Shown piece after piece: positions 3,084-50,607 of a stretch of DNA of 64,000 nucleotides (position 1 is its first letter; the number at the start of each line of letters is the position of its first letter). The position numbers were made by a program, and so were the translations under genes. Location: the sequence record OM634661.1; one strand, 5' to 3'. The notes beneath the pieces were generated by a model. It did not search any database and had not been told where the DNA came from. It was given only the letters and a program-made list of their open reading frames with translations.

Positions 3084-5009
3084 TTAAAGTCTTTTAATTA
3101 ATGATTTAGGAATTTCTTTAATAAATCTTGATGGTTTACAAAAGATTGGTGAAGATTGACCATACTCATATCTTCTTGAACAATGGCTGATAATAAGTTT
3201 CTTTTCAGCTCTTGTCATGGCAACATAAGCAAGTCTTCTTTCTTCTTCCATGTCCTTTTTATTTGATAAACTTCGACCATGAGGAAAAACTGATTCCTCC
3301 ATACCAATGATGAATACAACTGGATACTCAAGTCCTTTAGAAGAATGAACAGTCATAAGAGTCACAAGATTTTCATCATCAATAGAATCTGCATCATTTA
3401 CAAGTGAAGTTTCAGCAAGAAAATCTTCTAAGGATTTCTCTTCTTCTGCATCTTCTTCCCATTTAGCAGCCATGTTGACAAGTTCATCTAAGTTTTCCAT
3501 ACGAGTCTGATCTTCTTCTTTACCTGTTTGAAGAGATTCAGCATATCCACTTGTAATAATAATTGAGGAAATTAAGTCTGCAACGGTATGGTCTTTACTA
3601 TTAGAAAGTTGTTGATAAGTTTCCATCAATGAAACAAATTGTTTGATACTACCTTTAGCTTTTGCTGAGACTTTAGGAATATCGTCAATGTTGTTTAATG
3701 CTTTAGAAAATGGAATCATATAGTCATCTGCATACTTTTGTATCTTAGTGATAGTTGCAGTACCAATACCTCTTTTAGGTGTATTGATAATACGTTCAAA
3801 AGCAAGCATATCCATTTCGTTATGAATCGCTCTTAAATAAGCTGTAATATCCTTAATTTCTTTTCTGTCATAAAAGGCATGACCATTAACAAGTTGATAA
3901 GGAATTTTAAGCTGATTAAAAACGGTTTCAATAATTCTTGATTGCTTATTTGTTCTATAAAGAACAGCAAAATCTTTATAGCTATGACCTTGAAGTTTAA
4001 CCATCCTGTTAATAACATCAGAAACAAAGTCAGCTTCTCTTCCATCATCATCCAAATTTACAAGATAAATTGGTTCTCCTGGATCATTCTCTGTAAAAGC
4101 TGTCTTGTCTAATCTTTCTTCATTATGCTCAATCACACTATTTGCAGCGTTAACAATGTTTTGTGTTGAGCGGTAGTTCTGTTCAAGCCTATATGTTTTT
4201 AAATTGTCAAAATACTTATCAAAATTTATAATATTTGAGATCTGTGCTCCACGCCATTTATAGATGGATTGAGAATCATCTCCAACCGCATAGAGATTTT
4301 GATGATGAGCAGAGAAGTATTGCATAAGTTTAAACTGAGCAATGTTTGTATCTTGAACTTCATCTACAGATACATATCTAAATTGTCTCTGATAATGTTC
4401 TCTTACTTTTTCAGACACTTCAAACAAATAAACAGTTTTCATAATCAGGTCATCAAAATCAAAGTAATTCATTTCTTTTTTCTTCTCTTCGTATGCAATA
4501 AAGATATGAGCAACATCTTTTTCATGTTGATACTGAGCATTTTGAAGTAAGTCTTCAGGAAGAATCATGTCATTTTTTGCACTGCTGATAATTGATTTAA
4601 CAACATCAATATCATAGTCCAAGTCTGTTAATTCCATAGCTTCTTTTAATAGTTTCTTTTGTTCTTTATCATCAATTATAGTGATCTTATCATATCCAAT
4701 TTCAGATGAATATCTAGCAAGTATTCTATAGCAGATACCATGAAATGTGCCAATCCAAACAGATTCTGCTCGTTCACCAGCCATGCTAATTAATCTTTCT
4801 TTCATCTCTCTAGCTGCTTTATTTGTAAATGTTACAGCTAAAACCTGCCACCCTGGAACACCTTGTTCAAGAATGTATGAAATCCTTCTCGTTAAAGTAG
4901 CTGTTTTTCCTGATCCAGCTGCGGCTAGTACAAGTTTATTCCCTTCTGTATCTTGTACAATTTCTTTCTGGACAGGATTTAAACCTTCTAAGATATGTTC
5001 ATAACTCAA
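3084..5009 (-). CDS. pcrA: PcrA/UvrD-family SF1 DNA helicase
   Basis: AAAGSGKT, VDEVQDTN, VGDDSQSIYKWRGA, LEQNYRST, LMTVHSSKGLEY, EERRLAYVAMTRAE; TTG start at 5009 after GGAGG. Confidence 0.95.
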   Translation of the reverse strand: MSYEHILEGLNPVQKEIVQDTEGNKLVLAAAGSGKTATLTRRISYILEQGVPGWQVLAVTFTNKAAREMKERLISMAGERAESVWIGTFHGICYRILARYSSEIGYDKITIIDDKEQKKLLKEAMELTDLDYDIDVVKSIISSAKNDMILPEDLLQNAQYQHEKDVAHIFIAYEEKKKEMNYFDFDDLIMKTVYLFEVSEKVREHYQRQFRYVSVDEVQDTNIAQFKLMQYFSAHHQNLYAVGDDSQSIYKWRGAQISNIINFDKYFDNLKTYRLEQNYRSTQNIVNAANSVIEHNEERLDKTAFTENDPGEPIYLVNLDDDGREADFVSDVINRMVKLQGHSYKDFAVLYRTNKQSRIIETVFNQLKIPYQLVNGHAFYDRKEIKDITAYLRAIHNEMDMLAFERIINTPKRGIGTATITKIQKYADDYMIPFSKALNNIDDIPKVSAKAKGSIKQFVSLMETYQQLSNSKDHTVADLISSIIITSGYAESLQTGKEEDQTRMENLDELVNMAAKWEEDAEEEKSLEDFLAETSLVNDADSIDDENLVTLMTVHSSKGLEYPVVFIIGMEESVFPHGRSLSNKKDMEEERRLAYVAMTRAEKKLIISHCSRRYEYGQSSPIFCKPSRFIKEIPKSLIKRL

Positions 5010-5080
5010 TGTAATTCCTCCATCTCTGATATTACATATGGTGGGGAAGAGCATTAAACCCTTACCCACCAATGGTTTGA

Positions 5081-6086
5081 TTAGGTTAGTAGATCAATCA
5101 AGAAAGATTTTTCTAAAGTAAAACCAGAGGCTCTAGGGTGTCCTCCTCCTCCATAATACTTAGCTACTTGAGAAAGGTCAACATTTTCTTTAACACCTCT
5201 TAAACTTACTTTCATACTACCAACATCAATTAGCATGATGAAGTCAGCTTCAGGTAATGCGATAGCCATTCTGTTGCCAATTTCTGATCCATACATTTCA
5301 GAAAAAACATATGCACAGTTGTAACCTTGAATCTCTTTATACTGAACTTGCTTCATCTTCTTATCAAAATACTGATCAATAGAGCGTTGGTTTTGATGAA
5401 GGATAGCTTGTTCAACATCAGTAAATAAGATATCTTGGTTGTATTCAATACGATCAATCATGTTATCTGCAAATTCACTTCTTGATTGCAGGTAAAACAA
5501 ATCGTTCCAGAGTTTTGAAAAATCATCCTGATAAAAAGTATACCATTCCCATGTATCATACCTTCGAACAATTTCAGCAAATTCATCCATCTTATCAATA
5601 AGATTGTGACGGTCATAGCCTTCTACATGGAAGATATTTTCATCCGTAAAGAAGATAGATTCATCAGATTTAATATAATCCATAACAAGTGATGTGCCGC
5701 TTGTTTTGTGATTAAATCCATCATTAAAATAGGATTCAGGATATTCAACCTGTACTTTTACCCAAGGATATTTATTTAAATGAAGAGCTGTTTTATGATG
5801 ATCTAACAAGACAACATTTGCTTCATCTTGTTTTTGATGAATATTGTTCAACATTTCAGCAACTTCATCATTGACACTAATATCAGTAATGAAAATATGA
5901 TCATAATTTTTATAATCTCCAGATCTAATGAATTCAGAGATGTGATCATTTACTTTATCATAATCAAGATAATAATAATCAAGATCAAAATCACTGTCAT
6001 GAGCAGCAATTTTTAATAGGATGGCAGAACCAATCCCGTCAAAGATCGGTATGAGTGAAAACTTTAATTCGTTTTGAAATATTCAT
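5081..6086 (-). CDS. DHH/DHHA1 phosphoesterase, interrupted by a 1-nt insertion near 6041-6043
   Basis: ATG 6086 gives MNISKRIKVFTHTDL then TGA. Removing one T restores FTHTDLDGIGSAIL..ITDISV..LLDHHKT..GGGHPRASG (334 aa). Confidence 0.85.
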
Positions 6087-6283
6087 ACCTTACATATCTC
6101 CCTTCTATAACTGTGCATATAGTCACAGATTTCCTCGTATTTTTTATACTTTCTTTCTAAACTCAAATGTTTCTTATTCTTATAAAGAAGTGAAGCAATT
6201 TTTTCAGAGATGTTGTTACCAGTTATGCGAATCATCCATACATCTCCATCAGCTCCTTCATGTCTTTTGGACAATTTACTCAC
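6083..6283 (-). pseudogene. C-terminal remnant of a LAGLIDADG-type homing endonuclease
   Basis: 66 aa; WMIRITGN..IASLLYKN..LSLERKYKKY resembles the C-terminus of phage LAGLIDADG proteins; no LAGLIDADG helix present. Confidence 0.5.
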
Positions 6284-6491
6284 CTAACTTTTCTAATTTT
6301 TGTTTAATAGTTATATAGTGACTGATAAAAGCATCTACATGTTCTGACCAATCATATATTGTAAAATTTTCTTTTGCATGTTTAATCAAATCTTTAAATT
6401 CAGATTCAGTCAGTTTATAATCATTGTCCTCCATTACAGTTCTAAAATCATCTTCTTGTAAAATAAAAATTTTCTCTGACATTTGAAACAT
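6276..6491 (-). CDS. hypothetical protein
   Basis: 71-aa ORF with AAGGAG RBS. Confidence 0.65.
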   Translation of the reverse strand: MFQMSEKIFILQEDDFRTVMEDNDYKLTESEFKDLIKHAKENFTIYDWSEHVDAFISHYITIKQKLEKLGE

Positions 6492-43646: not shown

Positions 43647-44543
43647 CTATGCTTCTGTTGTTGTCAATTCTTCTTCATTTTCAGAAACTGGATTCAAAAC
43701 TTCTTCAGATAAAGTTTCAAACTTATTAAACTTTGTAGAGAAATTATGAAGTTTTGAGTTAAATGTAACACAATGAGATGAAATGCCCTCATCTTTTAAA
43801 GTAAGAATTGAATTTAAATAGCCAAACATTAATGTTCCAGCTGTAATATTCGTATGAATGTTTTGTGGATTAGACACTGCACGTTCTGCACAGGACTCTT
43901 CTGTTGGCAATTTGTCAGTTCCATCTAAAACTTCTGGGAACATTTCTGCAATACAAGGTGTTCTGAATGAAATAGGAGCACCTGACTTTGTATCTTTTGT
44001 TAGATAGTTTTTAGAATTATGACCAAGTACAACTTGCCCAGCATATTCTTCATTACCAGCATCAACCCAAAAACTATTTTCAATACGTTGATAAACATCA
44101 TGAATGATCTTTCTTGTTTTATTATTATCAACTGCACCAACGAAAACAGGAATTGAATTAGGAACTGATTTTGCAATGTCATAAAGCATTTTTTCTTCAG
44201 TTAAATAAGAGTCAACGATATTAATATCAATACCAAACGCTCTTGCATAGCGCATACCAAGAACTTGCGCCTTGTTTTTACCAACATCACTTGCAAGAAA
44301 GTTTTGTCTAGAGATGTTTTTGGTTTCAACTTCATCTCCATCAATAACAGTTACATAATGAGCAGGATTTGATTCAAATAATTTTGAACCAGCTTTTTGA
44401 TTTTGTAATGAAATTTGACGGAATAAGTTCGGGATAATATAACCGCCATTACCTCCAGAACCAATAATAATAAAATGTTTTGACATTTTTGGAAAGGTTG
44501 ATAATTGATAAGTTGGTGTGAATGAAAGTTCCAAATTAAACAC
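43647..44543 (-). CDS. ThiF/E1-like Ubl-activating enzyme (PRTRC ThiF type)
   Basis: IIIGSGGNGG, IDGDEVETKNISRQNF..GKNKA, AVDN..R, WVDAGN, putative catalytic Cys in ESCAE; start may be TTG 44534. Confidence 0.9.
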   Translation of the reverse strand: MFNLELSFTPTYQLSTFPKMSKHFIIIGSGGNGGYIIPNLFRQISLQNQKAGSKLFESNPAHYVTVIDGDEVETKNISRQNFLASDVGKNKAQVLGMRYARAFGIDINIVDSYLTEEKMLYDIAKSVPNSIPVFVGAVDNNKTRKIIHDVYQRIENSFWVDAGNEEYAGQVVLGHNSKNYLTKDTKSGAPISFRTPCIAEMFPEVLDGTDKLPTEESCAERAVSNPQNIHTNITAGTLMFGYLNSILTLKDEGISSHCVTFNSKLHNFSTKFNKFETLSEEVLNPVSENEEELTTTEA

Positions 44544-44555
44544 TCCTTTAATAAT

Positions 44556-44578
44556 AAAGGGCAGGTAAATACCCGCCC
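44556..44578 (-). terminator. hairpin between the JAB and E1 genes
   Basis: GGGCGGGTA-TT-TACCTGCCC followed by TTTATT. Confidence 0.5.
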
Positions 44579-44826
44579 ATTTTGATTTTATTTACTCTTA
44601 ACAGCTGGATTGAAAAGTTGATACTGTCCATTTTTAATCATAGTTGCAACAATATTACGAATATGTTCAATATCATTATCAACACTTTCAGAATTCACTG
44701 TATATAAATCAATTTCAGAAACGAAAATTGTATCGTCACTTTCATGATCAATAAGACTTACATAATTTTCAAAGTTACTGGCATATTCATCTTCATAATA
44801 TCCAGTGCTATACTCTTCTTCTTCGT

Positions 44827-45897
44827 TTACCAGACCTGTTTTTTTTTTGAATCTTGATAAGGATATTGAGAATCATGGTAAGAATATCCTTGCATGTAAT
44901 CATAGCCTTCTTCAAAATCATACGTGTTTGCATATCCAGTCAATGCTTCACCAGCTGAATAAGAATTAGCTCCACCATAGTTGTAAGTTGTTCTTTTACC
45001 TTTCCATGCAGGAGTAACACTAACTGAATGACAATTATACCAAGCAGCTGGATACTCAACATCAGGCCAAGGACCATTGTAAGGATGGTGTTCTACTTCT
45101 CTTTCTTCAGTGATAACTGGATCTTGGCCTTCAAGATTCAATACAGATGTCATAACCGTTTCTGTTTCATACATTGGTTGATCAAAAAGATGATGATAAG
45201 GAATGTTGATCTTTTTATCACCAGAAACAAAACGGAATAAGAAATCAGGTTGATCTTTTAAAATATTACCATAAACGCCATAAAACTGTGTCATATTTTC
45301 ATTTGAATCATCTGTACTAGACCAGAAAGCATTCATTGTGTGATGAGAATGCGTTTCACATAATGGCGTACAATTTTGTCTAAGCCAATGAACCATACCG
45401 TCATCTTTAAAGTCTGATAGTCCACCAGAGTTTTTCTGAATCGGACAGTAAATAACAAGCTGACCATCTTCTACAAGACCTTCAATTGGCTTCGCAGGAA
45501 TTTTTCCTTGAGCTTGGAAAAACTGAGGAAGCTGAACATTATCATGATTCCAAAAGAATAATACAGAAGCCTCTGTTTTGTCTCTATTGTAAACATCTTT
45601 ATAAAAAGATAGCACTTGAAGCCAATATTTAAAAGGAATTTTAGGTACTAATAGTTGGACTCCCTCCTCTAAAGGAGATAGACCTGGAATAGAAACGTTT
45701 TTGCCGAATTCTTGAATTTGTGTAATGAAAATAGAAATTGGTGTTTTTTCAATACGGAAGACACCATTTGATGCTGTTACGAAATTAAGCTTTTTGGAAA
45801 GGTCTAGATTTTCAAGACCTTCTCCTTTGTATTGTAAATAACCTGTTAATTGAGCTGCTAATTGTTGTTCTAAACTTAAAGCTAGTGGATTTGTCAT
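44827..45897 (-). CDS. prokaryotic JAB/JAMM metallopeptidase (PRTRC protein A type); probably extends to 44588 via the A10 run
   Basis: TEASVLFFW (catalytic Glu), CPIQ..S, JAMM motif HSHHTMNAFWSSTDD. Confidence 0.88.
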   Translation of the reverse strand: MTNPLALSLEQQLAAQLTGYLQYKGEGLENLDLSKKLNFVTASNGVFRIEKTPISIFITQIQEFGKNVSIPGLSPLEEGVQLLVPKIPFKYWLQVLSFYKDVYNRDKTEASVLFFWNHDNVQLPQFFQAQGKIPAKPIEGLVEDGQLVIYCPIQKNSGGLSDFKDDGMVHWLRQNCTPLCETHSHHTMNAFWSSTDDSNENMTQFYGVYGNILKDQPDFLFRFVSGDKKINIPYHHLFDQPMYETETVMTSVLNLEGQDPVITEEREVEHHPYNGPWPDVEYPAAWYNCHSVSVTPAWKGKRTTYNYGGANSYSAGEALTGYANTYDFEEGYDYMQGYSYHDSQYPYQDSKKKQVW

Positions 45898-45927: not shown

Positions 45928-46695
45928 TTACATTCTATTTGACATAAAGTGATCAATTGCTTCTTGAACATTCATATTTTCTGAAATCAAAATATCATTT
46001 GGAAATGAATATTGAGTTCCTTCTTCTTTTGCTTCTTTTAGTTTATCATCAATATATTGAAATAGATGATTTGTTCTAAATACACTAACATTTACATTGT
46101 CTTTTTCATAATTAAAGTCAACAAACTTTTGACTATCTAGATCATGATTAAAGGGATTAGACAAAAATTGATCTGGAACAGTCATAATACCTCTAGAAAA
46201 GTTCACATTTGGATAACTAGATTGTGAACCCCAACAAAGCCAAGGGTCACTATTTGTATTCGAAAATGGATATCTGTAAACTGTCTCATTACCAGAAAGA
46301 ATCTGGCCTTTTAGAGCATATACGCCGCCTTGATGATAAGTTCTTGCTTCTGATCCTTCTTGTTTTCTAAAACTTAAAAGCCAAAGAGCATCAGGTACAA
46401 CAATTTCATATTCAGCAAAGTTTTCATGACTATCATGAACATCATAAGAAACTTTTTTAATATGTTGCGGCACTGTAATTGCATAAAATTCTAATGAATT
46501 CTTTGACGCATATTTAATACAACCCCATTGACTTGGAAGTAAAGGTGTTTGACTAACAGCATTATCCGAAATGACTCGTTGAATATTTTCAACTGTTGTC
46601 TTTTTAATAGATTTCATACCAGAAGGTGTCACCTTTTCAATTGTAACACCTTCCTTTTCAATATGAATGCTTAGTTTAGGATTAGTAACAGACAT
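45928..46695 (-). CDS. prokaryotic E2 family D conjugating enzyme (PRTRC protein B type)
   Basis: TPLLP, VP.ALW, VYALK..TVYRYPFSNT..LCWG (catalytic Cys), FLSNPFNHDL; ATG 46695 after GGAGG. Confidence 0.82.
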   Translation of the reverse strand: MSVTNPKLSIHIEKEGVTIEKVTPSGMKSIKKTTVENIQRVISDNAVSQTPLLPSQWGCIKYASKNSLEFYAITVPQHIKKVSYDVHDSHENFAEYEIVVPDALWLLSFRKQEGSEARTYHQGGVYALKGQILSGNETVYRYPFSNTNSDPWLCWGSQSSYPNVNFSRGIMTVPDQFLSNPFNHDLDSQKFVDFNYEKDNVNVSVFRTNHLFQYIDDKLKEAKEEGTQYSFPNDILISENMNVQEAIDHFMSNRM

Positions 46696-46708: not shown

Positions 46709-48388
46709 TTAAATAATTGAGTATATTCTATTTTGTTCATGGAAATGAGTTACGGTATAAAATCTAACTGGAACTTCATGAACACCTGTTTGCATACCAA
46801 GAATAACTTTTAAATACTTGATAGGATCTCCACATTCAGATGAAATCTTCATGAAATATTGACGATTTTTGTCTAACGGATCTTTTACAAAAGCATGTAA
46901 GTTATTGTTAACGAAATAAATCCCATCCTTGATATGTGAATAATCAGCATTTGTGTTACTGAAAAATTCAAGCGTATCATCTAAACCAGAAAGATATTCT
47001 AAACGAGATTTAAAAAATCTATATGACTCTTTCTCATATTCATCTGTTTCTTCACTTTCAACAGAAGGAGTTTCAACATGTTCCTCTTTCTTTTGTTCGT
47101 CAATTTGTTTTTTGATTAAATCATACAAAGAATTCTCGAAATTTAATACAGGTTTTGAAGTATCATCACTTGTTGATTCAGTTTCAGTTGAATCATCTTG
47201 ATCTTCATTTGAAGAACGAAGAGCTTCCTGATATACTTCATTAAATTGATCTAATGACTCTTGATAATTATCAGGTAAAAGAGATTTAAATGGTGCTGTT
47301 TCAATTTTAATTGCCCATATTGAACCAATGATAACTTTTGCATACTCAATACCATTTTCAACAATAAATTCTTCAACAGAAGTAATTGAAGCAATTACAG
47401 GAACACCTTGTGATTTTTCATATTCAAAACCTTCTGGTAGCTCATCATTATAACCAACAGGAAGCATCATGAATTTTCTAGAACCATCAGGATCATTCTT
47501 AGATAAAATATTAATGTTTAAGCCTGGGACAATAAGATTAGATGAATCTACTTCTTTGTAAATTGGACCATGAAAATTCTCTGTAATATAAGAACGAACA
47601 GAAAGAGCTTCATTTGAAAGGTCCTTCTTAATATAAGATGAGATAATTTTATTATTTTCATCAATTGCTTGTTGATTCATTTGCTGAATCTTTTTATTAA
47701 TATGATCTTCATATTGTCCAACAATATTAGTATAAACTTCTTCATACTGAGACAAAATAAAAGCTTTATCTAGTGTTAAAGTAAGATTTCTAACAATATT
47801 AGTTGTAAGCCTTCTATCGTATGAATTTATTAAATGACTTTTAAATGGGATATGAATATAAAACAACAAAGAATCTTGATGTTCCTTGGTTTTCAAAGAA
47901 AAAAATTGAGCTGATGCAGCATCTTCTATCATTCTTTTAAGTGAACAATAAGTTGAATACATGTTTGCATGATGTTCTTCTAAGTATCTAATGAGTTCCT
48001 TATTATTTTGATCAGATTCTTCATGTCTAATTAATTCTATAGCTTTTAAAGCTGAAATTATTTTCTCATCTACAATACGCAAAGAAAGAGAATTTTTATT
48101 TTCATTAATTCTAGAGCCAGGGAATATCATTTTTAATAGATGTTTAAATGAATTTTTAATCTGATTATCATGATCTTCATTTGAATTTGGAAATTGTTCA
48201 AAAAAAGAAGGTAAATCTTCTAAAAAAGAATCTGTATTAAGTTCATATTCATCTAAAAGGCTGATAGAATACATGTCAGAAGATTGAGTATGTGAAAGAG
48301 CGGTTGTTAAGTCTTTCATTTCACGCAAAAAATTTAAGTAAGCTGCAATATGATTGGATTTTTTACGAAAAAGTTCTAAGTCATTCAT
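46709..48388 (-). CDS. large hypothetical protein in the Ubl operon
   Basis: 559-aa ORF, RBS AAAGGAGG; its stop is 13 nt before the E2 start. Confidence 0.8.
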   Translation of the reverse strand: MNDLELFRKKSNHIAAYLNFLREMKDLTTALSHTQSSDMYSISLLDEYELNTDSFLEDLPSFFEQFPNSNEDHDNQIKNSFKHLLKMIFPGSRINENKNSLSLRIVDEKIISALKAIELIRHEESDQNNKELIRYLEEHHANMYSTYCSLKRMIEDAASAQFFSLKTKEHQDSLLFYIHIPFKSHLINSYDRRLTTNIVRNLTLTLDKAFILSQYEEVYTNIVGQYEDHINKKIQQMNQQAIDENNKIISSYIKKDLSNEALSVRSYITENFHGPIYKEVDSSNLIVPGLNINILSKNDPDGSRKFMMLPVGYNDELPEGFEYEKSQGVPVIASITSVEEFIVENGIEYAKVIIGSIWAIKIETAPFKSLLPDNYQESLDQFNEVYQEALRSSNEDQDDSTETESTSDDTSKPVLNFENSLYDLIKKQIDEQKKEEHVETPSVESEETDEYEKESYRFFKSRLEYLSGLDDTLEFFSNTNADYSHIKDGIYFVNNNLHAFVKDPLDKNRQYFMKISSECGDPIKYLKVILGMQTGVHEVPVRFYTVTHFHEQNRIYSII

Positions 48389-48403: not shown

Positions 48404-48823
48404 TTAAATGAAATCGTCCTCTTGATCAATAGAGGGCAATGCAACAGGTTTAGTGGAATTAATTTTTGAAACAAAAAGAGTATTTTTTCTAACTTTCTGT
48501 GTGTAAATAGAAAGAATATCAGTAGAATAATGTACAAAATAACGTTTAATATTTCCTGAATCATTTTTTACTTGAGCTAATAATGTATTTGAAGAATATT
48601 CTGGTATAAAAAGATTTACGTTTAAGTCAGATACTTTCTCAATTGAATTAACATGATCAATGATAGATTGAAAACGAGCGCTGTAAGATTCTTGAGTTTC
48701 TTCTAATAACCAAAAATCTGACATGACTGCTGCATTAGATGCTGTGTATCCTACATCTATAAGCTTGTTATTCAATTCTTCTTTATTTAAATTTTCAAAA
48801 TCTGTTTGAAGTTGTTGAGTCAA
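48404..48823 (-). CDS. hypothetical protein in the Ubl operon (139 aa)
   Basis: TTG 48823 after AAGGAGGAG. Confidence 0.7.
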   Translation of the reverse strand: MTQQLQTDFENLNKEELNNKLIDVGYTASNAAVMSDFWLLEETQESYSARFQSIIDHVNSIEKVSDLNVNLFIPEYSSNTLLAQVKNDSGNIKRYFVHYSTDILSIYTQKVRKNTLFVSKINSTKPVALPSIDQEDDFI

Positions 48824-48929: not shown

Positions 48930-49637
48930 TTACTTTACAACGATGCGTGGCATACCTTTAACTCCAGCTTTCACTTCGAAAGTAATTGTATCACCTTCTA
49001 CAGTTGCTGTTGCATTTTCTAATTCTGGATAGAATTTGCTAAACTCTTCTTGAATTTCTTTAACAGTTAGCTCATCATTATCAATTTTTAATTCGTTAGT
49101 ACCGTATTTCACAGTACGAGCCATACCTTTAACTCCAGCTTTTACCTCGAAAGTAATTGTGTCGCCATCGACTGTTGCTGTTGCATTCTCAAGTTCAGGG
49201 TAAAATTTACTGAACTCTTCTTGAATCTCTTTAACTGTCAATTCATCGTTGTCAATTTTTAATTCATTAGTACCATATTTTACTGTACGTGCCATGCCCT
49301 TCACTCCCGCTTTCACTTCAAATGTAATTGTATCTCCATCAACAGTAGCTGTCGCATTTTCTAGTTCAGGGTAGAATTTGCTGAATTCCTCCTGAATTTC
49401 CTTAACAGTTAATTCATCATTATCAATTTTAAGTTCATTAGTGCCATACTTTACTGTGCGTGCCATACCTTTAACCCCCGCCTTTACCTCAAATGTAATT
49501 GTATTTCCTTCTACAGTTGCTGTTGCATTTTCAAGTTCTGGATAGAATTTAGTGAACTCTTGTTGGATTTCCTCAACTGTCAACTCGTCATTATCAATTT
49601 TCAATTCGTTAGTACCGTATTTTACTGTTCTTGTCAT
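48930..49637 (-). CDS. poly-ubiquitin-like precursor: 4 x 57-aa Prok_Ub (PRTRC protein C type) plus MPRIVVK cap
   Basis: ATG 49637 after GGAGG; every unit ends FYPELENATA..ITFEVKAGVKG, matching the PRTRC-C C-terminal GxKG pattern. Confidence 0.88.
   Translation of the reverse strand: MTRTVKYGTNELKIDNDELTVEEIQQEFTKFYPELENATATVEGNTITFEVKAGVKGMARTVKYGTNELKIDNDELTVKEIQEEFSKFYPELENATATVDGDTITFEVKAGVKGMARTVKYGTNELKIDNDELTVKEIQEEFSKFYPELENATATVDGDTITFEVKAGVKGMARTVKYGTNELKIDNDELTVKEIQEEFSKFYPELENATATVEGDTITFEVKAGVKGMPRIVVK
48954..49637 (-). repeat. four tandem 171-bp coding repeats
   Basis: Units at 49637-49467, 49466-49296, 49295-49125 and 49124-48954; many third-position differences. Confidence 0.95.
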
Positions 49638-49776
49638 TATAAATTCCTCCGATATAATAAGTTTTTTTTTGTAAATCATTATTTTATGATGTCTTTATCT
49701 AAGAAGACTATATATTAGAATGAGATAAATCACAGATCTCTTCGATCAATCACCCCCTTAAGCTAATAAAAATTAT

Positions 49777-50607
49777 TTAATCATCATAATCTACTTCATC
49801 ATCATCGTCATCGTGACCTTGCTCCATTCTTTGCCTTTGATCAATAACTAATTTGCTTAATTCCTCATCATCAATCTCAAGTAACGAATAAATCTTATTC
49901 GTCAGTTCATGAGAATTGTAGTCTAAAAGATAAGACTTGATTAATTTCCAATTGATTCCATCATCATCAAGATTAACAAAATTGTCAATTTTCTCTTGAA
50001 GATCTTTATCAATTGTTAATCCATATTTTAAAGAAAAACGGATTGATCTAAGAAAACGATTTGTTGTTAATGTCTTTTTACTTGTAAAATCTGTTTCTCT
50101 TAATATTTTATTTTCCAAATCACTTAAAGATTGTTTTGTACAATACATTTTCTTTAAGAATGGAGAATAAGAAAATTGATTAATTGTAAAATCAAAATGA
50201 TGCGGTGGTGTCATATAAGAATTGCTATTCAAATAAGGTTGTTTTTCAAGATCTTTTTCTGATATATGTTCATGGTTCTTAGAAAATATATTGAAAGATA
50301 AATATGATGAATCAAAAGGGTTATTGTAAATAAGATCCTTCTCTTTATAAGAATTTTTTGATTGAAAAACAGGTGTATATTCACTTGTTCGAATATATTC
50401 ATAAATGTTTGAACCATTTGGATGAATAAGATCTACATCATTAAATTCAAATCCTAATAAATGATCCCTAACAAATCCACCAACAATCACAAACTTTTCT
50501 TTTGAACCACCTCCATTGTTGCTTAATATTAAAAAATCTAAATCATCAATAAGATTAATAACACTTGTTGGAATGTCAATTTCTATATCTTTTTCAAGAT
50601 AAGTCAT
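49777..50607 (-). CDS. class II (CCA-adding/PolyA polymerase-like) nucleotidyltransferase, short and motif-divergent
   Basis: IVGGFVRDHLLG..DVDL, DFTINQ, RFLRSIRF. Confidence 0.75.
   Translation of the reverse strand: MTYLEKDIEIDIPTSVINLIDDLDFLILSNNGGGSKEKFVIVGGFVRDHLLGFEFNDVDLIHPNGSNIYEYIRTSEYTPVFQSKNSYKEKDLIYNNPFDSSYLSFNIFSKNHEHISEKDLEKQPYLNSNSYMTPPHHFDFTINQFSYSPFLKKMYCTKQSLSDLENKILRETDFTSKKTLTTNRFLRSIRFSLKYGLTIDKDLQEKIDNFVNLDDDGINWKLIKSYLLDYNSHELTNKIYSLLEIDDEELSKLVIDQRQRMEQGHDDDDDEVDYDD

What the first reader, a model, noticed from the sequence alone, without database searches (positions are those of the whole stretch)
48930..49637. Eukaryote-style polyubiquitin gene on a phage-like replicon: four head-to-tail Ubl units with a C-terminal cap
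Seen: four 57-aa units joined directly at ...VKAGVKG|M. Units 2 and 3 are identical in protein, unit 4 differs at 1 residue and unit 1 at 6. The DNA is diverged at third positions (first ten codons: unit 2 ATG GCA CGC ACA GTA AAG TAT GGC ACT AAT; unit 3 ..CGT..AAA..GGT; unit 4 GCT CGT ACT GTG AAA TAC GGT ACT AAC). The last Gly is blocked by the tail MPRIVVK. Known: PRTRC protein C (Prok_Ub) ends in GxKG and is, to my knowledge, usually a single domain. Eukaryotic polyubiquitin genes are linear repeats with synonymous-only divergence and a blocked C-terminus that a DUB opens. Inference: this is an old repeat under strong purifying selection, a precursor that the operon JAB cuts into four monomers for high-dose conjugation during infection. 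It would be a convergent polyubiquitin architecture.
Basis: partly seen in the sequence, partly recalled or inferred. Interest (0 to 1): 0.95.

Follow-up and report, generated by a model that had tools for sequence, protein, structure and literature searches.

The report
Phage polyubiquitin-like precursor gene
A jumbo Bacillus phage carries a gene of four nearly identical ubiquitin-like units joined head to tail and closed by a short cap, next to its own E1, E2 and JAB protease genes, so it looks like an independent invention of the eukaryotic polyubiquitin gene, though cleavage into monomers has not been shown.

Summary
Window 48930-49637 (-) encodes 235 aa: four 57-aa units and a 7-aa tail. 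The window is Bacillus phage vB_BauM_KLEB27-3 (216.7 kb), gene gp199. Each unit matches Prok_Ub / PRTRC protein C and models as a compact beta-grasp-like module with a floppy C-terminal tail ending in Gly.

Downstream lie a small helical protein, a 559-aa protein, an E2 (Prok-E2_D type), a JAB protease with an intact metal site, and a ThiF-type E1. This is the "6d"/PRTRC operon type, which normally has a single standalone Ubl.

Relatives, all on phage-like contigs, carry 1-7 units.

Synonymous sites between units are fully randomised. Units are positional orthologues between genomes, with no DNA homogenisation. Yet units within a genome stay about 90-100% identical in protein and change in lockstep between genomes. 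This fits selection for identical mature monomers.

Best reading (0.6): a polyprotein precursor cut after each Gly, probably by the operon's JAB, to feed phage-encoded conjugation. Cleavage and targets are inferred.

I rate it a new variant of a known kind. I found no prior description in the literature I could search.

The parts
48930..49637 (-). Poly-Ubl gene (KLEB27-3 gp199), 235 aa plus stop: four Prok_Ub units and a cap
49467..49637 (-). Unit 1 (57 aa). It is the outlier, differing from unit 2 at 6 residues
49296..49466 (-). Unit 2 (57 aa), identical in protein to unit 3
49125..49295 (-). Unit 3 (57 aa)
48954..49124 (-). Unit 4 (57 aa), 1 residue different from units 2 and 3
48933..48953 (-). 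C-terminal cap of 7 residues after the last Gly. It resembles the first residues of a unit. Modelled as disordered
49646..49650 (-). Shine-Dalgarno GGAGG, 8 nt before the ATG at 49637
48404..48823 (-). gp198, a small, fast-diverging protein with an invariant Asp-(Phe/Tyr)-Ile at its C-terminus. It is a conserved cassette member
46709..48388 (-). gp197, 559 aa, fast-diverging with a charged central region and no family hit. It is a conserved cassette member
45928..46695 (-). gp196, E2-like (Prok-E2_D / PRTRC_B, weak hits). It has an invariant Cys and an invariant His downstream of it
44827..45897 (-). gp195, JAB/JAMM peptidase (Prok-JAB / PRTRC_A, weak hits) with an N-terminal extra domain. The Glu, His-x-His, Ser and Asp of the metal site are invariant in 4 relatives
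43647..44534 (-). gp194, ThiF-type E1 with an invariant Gly-rich nucleotide loop and an invariant Cys

Best explanation
gp199 is a polyprotein precursor of a phage-encoded ubiquitin-like modifier.

Shown:
- It has four head-to-tail Prok_Ub (PRTRC-C type) units.
- Each unit ends in the same Gly-terminated tail.
- The last Gly is capped by 7 residues.
- The gene heads a conserved six-gene cassette that also encodes a JAB metalloprotease, an E2-like protein and a ThiF-type E1.

Inferred:
- The precursor is cut after the terminal Gly of every unit, most likely by the cassette's JAB. This releases four near-identical 57-aa monomers with free C-terminal Gly.
- The E1 adenylates the monomers and hands them to the E2 for attachment to target proteins, of the phage or the host, during infection.
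- The tandem layout multiplies the yield of modifier per transcript and per translation event.
- The cap keeps the last unit inert until it is processed.
- The fully scrambled synonymous codons keep the repeat stable in the DNA.
- Selection on the mature product keeps all units identical as the modifier co-evolves with its enzymes or targets.
For: 1. Family and fold.
- Prok_Ub matches in four stretches, E 5e-27, 93.9 bits against a cut-off of 25.
- PRTRC_C scores 61 bits against a cut-off of 45.95.
- The AF2 single-unit model has pLDDT 83 and a two-strand, two-helix, two-strand layout.
- The AF2 full-length model shows four separate modules. The last five residues of units 1 and 3 and the cap fall below pLDDT 50. 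Blocks spanning the other two unit ends average 65 and 55. pTM is 0.45, so there is no fixed packing.
- The Foldseek PDB list is dominated by ubiquitin, SUMO, NEDD8 and UBL domains at TM 0.55-0.67.

2. Enzymes.
- The JAB metal-site residues are invariant in 4 relatives.
- The E2 has an invariant Cys and a downstream His.
- The E1 has an invariant Gly-rich loop and Cys.
- The cassette order is conserved in 9 further loci.

3. Every unit looks usable.
- In 21 aligned units from six phages, the last five columns are Ala, Gly, Thr/Val, Lys, Gly. Four of the five are invariant.
- In 66 family proteins, unit number runs from 1 to 7. The counts are 5, 24, 10, 15, 9, 2 and 1.
- Sixty of the 66 carry a cap after the last Gly. 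It is a single residue in 21 and reaches 22 residues.
- Spacers between units vary from 0 to about 20 residues.
- Some phages split the units over two adjacent capped genes.

4. Selection.
- Between units in the window, dN is 0.007-0.06 and pS is 0.61-0.86.
- In nine genes, codon identity between units equals a random reassignment of synonymous codons, z between -2.0 and +2.2.
- Third positions show positional orthology between genomes. KLEB against L009 is 86-93% on the diagonal and 47-60% off it. WH1 against Edson is 59-81% against 33-54%.
- Protein is homogenised within genomes. The median is 0.90 within a protein and 0.40 between proteins, over 61 proteins.
- Replacements appear in parallel in all units at columns 4, 6, 10, 11, 13 and 15. 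In some columns different units carry different residues, which argues against simple copying.

5. Established knowledge.
- E1 enzymes need a free C-terminal Gly.
- JAB/JAMM peptidases expose or remove Ubl C-termini in the archaeal SAMP, CBASS Cap3 and Bil systems.
Against: - No cleavage, monomer or conjugate has been observed, so all processing steps are inference.
- The E2 and JAB hits are weak and below curated cut-offs (22 bits against 25, 21 against 25, 30 against 101.8, 18 against 131).
- No Foldseek PDB hit reaches E 1e-3, so the beta-grasp assignment rests on the HMMs plus topology.
- Six family members end on the bare Gly. Ten of the two-unit members have units only 33-69% identical. 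The precursor logic may therefore not hold for the whole family.
- The five-unit homologue in phage WH1 is annotated 'virion structural protein'. This would also fit an intact structural repeat protein.
- Lockstep protein evolution could also be demanded of a repeat protein that binds a repetitive partner.
Confidence: 0.6

Rival explanations
1. The protein acts as a ready-made linear chain. Only the cap is removed, and the whole four-unit protein is activated at its last Gly and attached en bloc. This would resemble the two-domain ISG15/BilA or the three-domain Bub Ubl proteins, or mimic a linear poly-Ubl chain.
For: - Multi-beta-grasp Ubls that are conjugated or assembled whole are known in bacteria.
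- Ten two-unit relatives have units only 33-69% identical, as in such proteins.
- The first unit is the outlier in 25 of 37 proteins with three or more units, which hints at a positional role.
Against: - Internal units keep the complete Gly-terminated tail, with four of its five columns invariant in 21 aligned units. Whole-conjugated multi-domain Ubls do not need this.
- Units are kept identical and change in lockstep.
- Unit number is free to vary from 2 to 7, and the units can be split over two genes.
Confidence: 0.2
2. The protein is an intact, unconjugated repeat protein. It would be a virion or scaffold component built of beta-grasp beads, and the neighbouring E1, E2 and JAB would act on something else.
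For: - The WH1 homologue is labelled 'virion structural protein', a label used selectively in that record.
- The beads-on-a-string model fits.
- Weak PHROG similarities to head and tail proteins exist, but with no stretch passing on its own.
Against: - The gene always heads the E1/E2/JAB cassette.
- The Gly-terminated motif of a conjugatable Ubl is conserved in each unit.
- Caps of a single residue are common and have no obvious structural use.
- The gene lies in an auxiliary-function region, not a structural module.
- The origin of the WH1 label could not be checked.
Confidence: 0.1
3. The protein is a decoy or sponge. A multivalent Ubl would saturate or mislead a host Ubl-based defence or its protease, without productive conjugation by the phage.
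For: - Host Ubl conjugation systems that target phage parts exist, for example Bil (listing).
- The fast, coordinated change of a surface patch on strands 1-2 is what an arms race would give.
Against: - The phage carries a full E1-E2-JAB set with intact catalytic residues, which a decoy would not need.
- There is no similarity to defence-system models beyond weak E1 hits.
Confidence: 0.05

Closest known systems
Operon type '6d' of Iyer, Burroughs and Aravind 2006 (PMC1779556), also called the PRTRC cassette (TIGR03735-03738; Pfam Prok_Ub, Prok-E2_D, Prok-JAB, ThiF)
   Same: - It has the same set of parts: a small Gly-terminated beta-grasp Ubl, a JAB with an extra N-terminal domain, a ThiF-type E1, an E2 with a Cys and a downstream His, and fast-diverging helical proteins.
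   Different: - The Ubl there is described as a small standalone protein; here it has four units, and 1-7 in relatives, plus a cap.
- The enzymes score far below the curated PRTRC cut-offs.
- No ParB-related gene lies nearby.
- The carrier is a lytic-type jumbo phage, not an ICE or plasmid.
- The function of PRTRC itself is unknown; no functional study was evident among the 30 of 45 PRTRC papers listed by title and abstract.
Eukaryotic polyubiquitin genes (yeast UBI4, human UBB/UBC type)
   Same: - Units are head to tail without spacers.
- Units are identical or near-identical in protein while synonymous sites differ.
- Unit number varies between genomes.
- One or a few extra residues block the last Gly.
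- A genome can carry more than one such gene.
   Different: - There is no detectable sequence homology to ubiquitin (no ubiquitin family hit).
- The unit is 57 aa and the tail ends Lys-Gly, not Gly-Gly.
- The likely processing enzyme is a JAB metalloprotease, not a cysteine DUB.
- There is no DNA-level concerted evolution: synonymous sites are fully randomised.
- The modifier itself evolves fast between genomes, with a median identity of 40%.
PolyUbl of operon type 6e, Bub and type II Bil Ubl2/Ubl3 proteins (PMC1779556; Gong et al. 2024, PMC11601603)
   Same: - These are prokaryotic proteins with several beta-grasp domains in tandem, next to E1, E2 and JAB-like genes. They were already called 'reminiscent of eukaryotic poly-ubiquitin'.
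   Different: [quoted passage not shown]
- The three-domain proteins form dimers and Ca-dependent filaments as whole proteins.
- Their operon architecture differs: JAB-E1 or E2-E1 fusions and DUF6527.
- There is no Multi_ubiq hit here.
JAB/JAMM-processed pro-Ubls (archaeal SAMP/HvJAMM1, Caldiarchaeum pro-ubiquitin, Bil BilA/BilC, CBASS Cap3). This comparison rests on my own knowledge.
   Same: - A JAB peptidase encoded beside the Ubl removes residues after the C-terminal Gly before E1 activation.
   Different: - Those precursors carry a single Ubl with a short extension, not a chain of identical units.

Membership tests
Prok_Ub (PF14454) / PRTRC protein C (TIGR03738) | The family HMM scores above its curated cut-off | tested here: met
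   PF14454 scores 93.9 bits against a cut-off of 25, in four stretches. A single unit scores 26.2 bits. TIGR03738 scores 61 bits against 45.95.
Prok_Ub (PF14454) / PRTRC protein C (TIGR03738) | Beta-grasp fold | tested here: inconclusive
   AF2 gives a compact two-strand, two-helix, two-strand module at pLDDT 83. The best Foldseek PDB hits are mostly Ub, SUMO and UBL domains at TM 0.55-0.67, but none reaches E 1e-3.
Prok_Ub (PF14454) / PRTRC protein C (TIGR03738) | Conserved C-terminal glycine on a flexible tail | tested here: met
   Gly57 and Gly54 are invariant in 21 units. The last five residues of units 1 and 3 and the cap are below pLDDT 50, and blocks spanning the other two unit ends average 65 and 55.
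Prok_Ub (PF14454) / PRTRC protein C (TIGR03738) | Small standalone single-domain protein | tested here: not met
   The window gene has four units. Relatives have 1-7, and only 5 of 66 have a single unit.
PRTRC cassette / operon type 6d | ThiF-type E1, E2 (family D) and JAB (protein A) encoded with the Ubl | tested here: met
   Pfam ThiF E 2e-12. Prok-E2_D and Prok-JAB are weak hits. Catalytic residues are invariant. Synteny is conserved.
PRTRC cassette / operon type 6d | Proteins reach the curated equivalog scores of TIGR03735/03736/03737 | tested here: not met
   Scores are 30.1 against 101.8, 107.2 against 144.75, and 18.3 against 131.45.
PRTRC cassette / operon type 6d | ParB-related protein in the cassette | tested here: not met
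   None of the six cassette proteins hits ParB. No ParB family is annotated within about 6-9 kb in the phage record or the related contigs.
Eukaryotic-type polyubiquitin gene architecture | Head-to-tail units without spacer and near-identical in protein | tested here: met
Eukaryotic-type polyubiquitin gene architecture | Extra residue(s) after the last Gly | tested here: met
   The window gene has a 7-aa cap. Sixty of 66 relatives are capped, 21 of them by one residue.
Eukaryotic-type polyubiquitin gene architecture | Units are ubiquitin (sequence homology, Gly-Gly end) | tested here: not met
   There is no ubiquitin family hit. The units end Lys-Gly.
Eukaryotic-type polyubiquitin gene architecture | The precursor is cleaved into monomers | not testable with these tools
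   This needs protein-level data.
6e polyUbl / Bub-Bil multi-domain Ubl (Multi_ubiq) | Two or three beta-grasp domains (recalled as diverged from one another, not checked here), with JAB-E1 or E2-E1 fusion partners | tested here: not met
   There is no Multi_ubiq hit and the E1, E2 and JAB genes are separate. Units are near-identical.

The most novel reading that the evidence does not exclude
Jumbo phages of Bacillus-like hosts independently invented the polyubiquitin gene. On this reading, a capped chain of 2-7 identical Ubl units is cut by a phage JAB and conjugated by phage E1 and E2 enzymes to virion or host proteins. This would be the first virus of bacteria shown to run its own ubiquitin-like conjugation from a polyprotein precursor. 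Its units are held identical purely by selection on the mature product: amino-acid changes occur in lockstep while the DNA of the units stays unhomogenised.
Probability: 0.5. Interest if true: 0.85.

Novelty: new variant of a known kind. Interest (0 to 1): 0.75.

Why it matters
If the precursor reading holds, the polyubiquitin gene layout arose at least twice, in eukaryotes and in phages. That would argue the layout is an adaptive solution for a fast, high-yield supply of a modifier and not a historical accident.

It would also show that a bacterial virus carries a complete Ubl conjugation pathway of its own. Ubl conjugation in the phage-bacterium conflict is so far known only from the host side (Bil, CBASS Cap2/3).

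It would give the uncharacterised 6d/PRTRC family a tractable and strongly expressed example.

The evolutionary pattern is unusual and would interest people who study repeat evolution. Synonymous sites are fully randomised and units are positional orthologues, yet amino-acid change is lockstep. This separates selection for identical products from DNA-level concerted evolution.

Tried and rejected
- **Upstream start.** The ATG at 49679 of the mechanical 249-aa ORF was rejected in favour of 49637. That site has an RBS, matches the GenBank bounds and starts at a unit boundary.
- **Assembly artefact.** Rejected.
- **Recent duplication or gene conversion as the cause of identical units.** Rejected. 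Codon identity between units is at the random level in nine genes, and third positions show positional orthology.
- **Active selection for codon differences beyond random.** A first comparison with local codon usage suggested this for WH1 and Edson. A permutation that keeps each gene's own codon usage gave z of only -2.0 and -0.9, so it is not supported.
- **Internal translation starts as the source of monomers.** G-rich stretches precede each internal ATG, but the Ala-Gly-Val-Lys-Gly codons largely force them. Met follows the Gly at only 55 of 141 internal junctions. In any case, no stop separates the units.
- **Searches that found nothing.**
  - PDB by sequence, for the unit and for the JAB.
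  - PHROGs, for the five enzyme and partner proteins.
  - PADLOC, beyond weak E1 hits.
  - Rfam over the cassette.
  - Word-index search for single-unit-length relatives.
  - GTDB representative genomes.
  - Papers on KLEB27-3, WH1, Prok_Ub, or phage and polyUbl.
- **Jumbo-phage comparative review.** PMC7824862 does not mention a Ubl, JAB or ThiF system.
- **Two 700-aa ORFs elsewhere in the window.** They looked like a duplication by length but are unrelated.
- **Slip note.** Neither was entered into a tool. The first is not used in this report. The second is used only as a named residue pattern.

Full report
**Observation**

Window 48930-49637 (- strand) is an ORF of 235 codons plus a stop. 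It consists of four 57-aa units joined directly, then seven more residues.
- Tandem Repeats Finder reports period 171, 4.0 copies, 81% matches, no indels, score 862.
- Units 2 and 3 are identical in protein but differ at 32 nucleotides, 31 at third positions.
- Unit 4 differs from them at one residue and unit 1 at six.
- The start is the ATG at 49637, which has GGAGG eight bases upstream. The longer mechanical ORF from 49679 is not supported.
- The units share at most 26 identical bases in a row.
- An independent assembly at 95.8% identity has the same four units. The repeat is therefore not an assembly artefact.

**Where it sits**

The window is 100% identical to Bacillus phage vB_BauM_KLEB27-3 (OM634661, 216.7 kb, host Bacillus australimaris). 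There the gene is gp199, 'hypothetical protein'. It heads a run of six genes on the same strand:
- gp199, the poly-Ubl;
- gp198, a small protein;
- gp197, 559 aa;
- gp196, E2-like;
- gp195, the JAB;
- gp194, a ThiF-type E1.

The enzymes look active.
- The E1 hits Pfam ThiF (E 2e-12) and PRTRC_ThiF (107 bits). Its Gly-rich loop and one Cys are invariant in six relatives.
- The JAB hits are weak. However, the Glu, the His-x-His, the Ser and the Asp of the JAMM metal site are invariant in four relatives that are only 43-89% identical overall.
- The E2-like protein has an invariant Cys and an invariant His downstream of it. This is the stated hallmark of the E2 in operon type 6d.

**What the units are**

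- The whole protein hits Pfam Prok_Ub in four stretches (E 5e-27, 93.9 bits against a cut-off of 25). It hits PRTRC protein C at 61 bits against 45.95. A single unit just passes Prok_Ub at 26.2 bits.
- AlphaFold2 with an alignment of 16 units gives a compact module of two strands, two helices and two strands, at mean pLDDT 83.
- The full-length model has four such modules with no confident mutual packing (pTM 0.45). The last five residues of units 1 and 3 and the cap are below pLDDT 50. Blocks spanning the other two unit ends average 65 and 55.
- Foldseek against the PDB gives no hit at E 1e-3. The top of the list is mostly ubiquitin, SUMO, NEDD8, UBL domains and a bacterial Ubl, at TM 0.55-0.67, together with protein G B1 domains.
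- I therefore treat the beta-grasp assignment as supported by HMM and topology, but not proven by fold search.
- Against predicted viral structures, the best hits are a 299-aa protein 50% identical over the aligned unit, which I take to be the WH1 homologue from its length and identity, and a 63-aa protein of Acinetobacter phage ME3.

**Relatives**

- Bacillus phages WH1 and Edson (230-234 kb) have a five-unit gene with a different 15-aa cap, at the head of the same cassette.
- The word-index protein search found 22 proteins, all with 3-6 units.
- A phmmer scan of 1.84 billion representatives with one unit found 57 proteins with 1-7 matched stretches.
- Pooled, 66 proteins carry the Gly-terminated motif. 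The counts by unit number from 1 to 7 are 5, 24, 10, 15, 9, 2 and 1.
- Sixty of the 66 have residues after the last Gly. It is one residue in 21 and up to 22 residues in others. One apparent fragment is set aside.
- Spacers between units vary from none to about 20 residues.
- The residue after an internal Gly is Met in 55 junctions, Ala in 51 and Ser in 20, out of 141.
- Some contigs carry two adjacent capped genes, with 4+3 or 2+3 units.
- The contigs that could be read are phage-like, up to 264 kb, and keep the same gene order.
- A pattern scan of one genome per bacterial and archaeal species found none.

**Evolution of the repeat**

- Between units of the window gene, dN is 0.007-0.06. The proportion of synonymous differences is 0.61-0.86, which is at or beyond saturation.
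- I ran a permutation that reshuffles synonymous codons within each gene. In nine genes, codon identity between units is indistinguishable from random, with z from -2.0 to +2.2. There is no trace of DNA homogenisation.
- Third positions show that unit i of one genome is the orthologue of unit i in a related genome.
  - KLEB against L009: 86-93% on the diagonal against 47-60% off it.
  - KLEB against L008: 60-75% against 40-58%.
  - WH1 against Edson: 59-81% against 33-54%.
- Yet protein sequences are homogenised within genomes. Units 2-4 are identical or differ by one residue, and they differ between genomes.
- Across 61 multi-unit proteins, the median unit identity is 0.90 within a protein and 0.40 between proteins.
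- Among four close relatives, replacements at columns 4, 6, 10, 11, 13 and 15 (strands 1-2) appear in all four units. Replacements at columns 22, 26 and 29 (helix 1) appear in several units, and column 25 changes in single units.
- In some columns, different units carry different residues or codons. This looks like independent change in each unit, not copying.
- I infer selection for identical mature products that track the same partners. I cannot exclude short-tract gene conversion.
- The first unit is the outlier in 25 of 37 proteins with three or more units.

**Most likely mechanism (inference)**

- An E1 can only adenylate a free C-terminal Gly. Every unit here is blocked, by the next unit or by the cap, so a peptidase must act first. 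The cassette's JAB is the obvious candidate.
- Cutting after each Gly would release four near-identical monomers for the E1 and E2.
- The window's cap begins like a unit (Met, Pro, Arg against Met, Ala, Arg). The last junction therefore resembles the internal ones.
- Single-residue caps elsewhere show that this resemblance is not required.
- Targets are unknown. The 'virion structural protein' label on the WH1 homologue is applied selectively in that record. It is a lead that the Ubl ends up in virions, but I could not trace where the label came from.

**Rivals**

- The whole chain is conjugated en bloc after cap removal.
- It is an intact structural repeat protein.
- It is a decoy against host Ubl-based defence.

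The Gly-terminated tail is invariant in internal units. Unit number varies freely, and the phage carries a complete set of enzymes. Each of these argues against one or more of the rivals. None of the rivals is excluded without protein-level data.

**Comparison with what is known**

- The operon is of type 6d of Iyer et al. 2006, later named PRTRC. That type is described with a small standalone Ubl.
- The same paper describes polyUbl proteins of 2-3 domains in a different operon type (6e) and calls them reminiscent of polyubiquitin.
- Gong et al. [quoted passage not shown]
- What is new here is a chain of identical, individually Gly-terminated units with a cap, in the 6d family, on phages.
- I found no description of this in the paper library. 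A jumbo-phage comparative review mentions no Ubl system.
- Subscription papers, for example later surveys by the same group, were not searchable. Prior mention therefore cannot be ruled out.

**Caveats**

- Cleavage, conjugation and targets are all inferred.
- Several enzyme family hits are below curated thresholds.
- Ten two-unit family members have units only 33-69% identical, and six proteins end on a bare Gly. The precursor logic is best supported for genes with three or more units.
- **Slip note.**

Noticed in passing
L004 12827-15287 (also L005): In these metagenomic jumbo-phage contigs the JAB gene is in two ORFs. The first ends right at the His-x-His of the metal site. The second starts just before the Ser/Asp half. 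A LAGLIDADG homing-endonuclease ORF lies between them. No Rfam intron model matched.
   Followed up: partly
window 48404-48823 (-), with homologues in L002, L004, L006, L007 and L011: The small cassette protein gp198 diverges fast but ends in an invariant Asp-(Phe/Tyr)-Ile at its very C-terminus in six relatives. This could be a docking or recognition tail.
   Followed up: partly
L002 7656-8555 (phage WH1 gp211), also gp208 at 4919-6394: The five-unit poly-Ubl of WH1 is annotated 'virion structural protein' although it lies far from the structural module. The record uses this label selectively. The source of the label could not be found.
   Followed up: partly
L015 3240-3977 and 4071-4613; L016 8543-8899 and 9001-9579: Some relatives carry two adjacent poly-Ubl genes, with 4+3 and 2+3 units. 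Each has its own RBS and its own cap.
   Followed up: yes
window 44544-44826, hairpin at 44559-44578 (-): A 283-nt gap separates the JAB and E1 genes. It holds a GC-rich terminator-like hairpin followed by a T-rich run, just upstream of the E1 start. This may set the E1 level apart from the rest of the cassette.
   Followed up: no
window 49777-50607 (-), with homologues in L007-L009: A tRNA nucleotidyltransferase / poly(A) polymerase-family gene lies directly upstream of the poly-Ubl gene in the KLEB27-3 group. It has weak Gad2-family hits in relatives. WH1 and Edson have other genes at that position.
   Followed up: no
window 49467-49637 (-), and first units of relatives: The first unit is the most divergent unit in 25 of 37 proteins with three or more units. 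In the window it differs at 6 residues while units 2-4 differ at 0-1.
   Followed up: partly
BFVD hit A0A172Q0B5 (Acinetobacter phage vB_AbaM_ME3, 63 aa): A single-unit protein of another jumbo phage is the best structural match outside the Bacillus phage group (E 2e-3, TM 0.76, 34% identity). Its gene neighbourhood was not examined.
   Followed up: no
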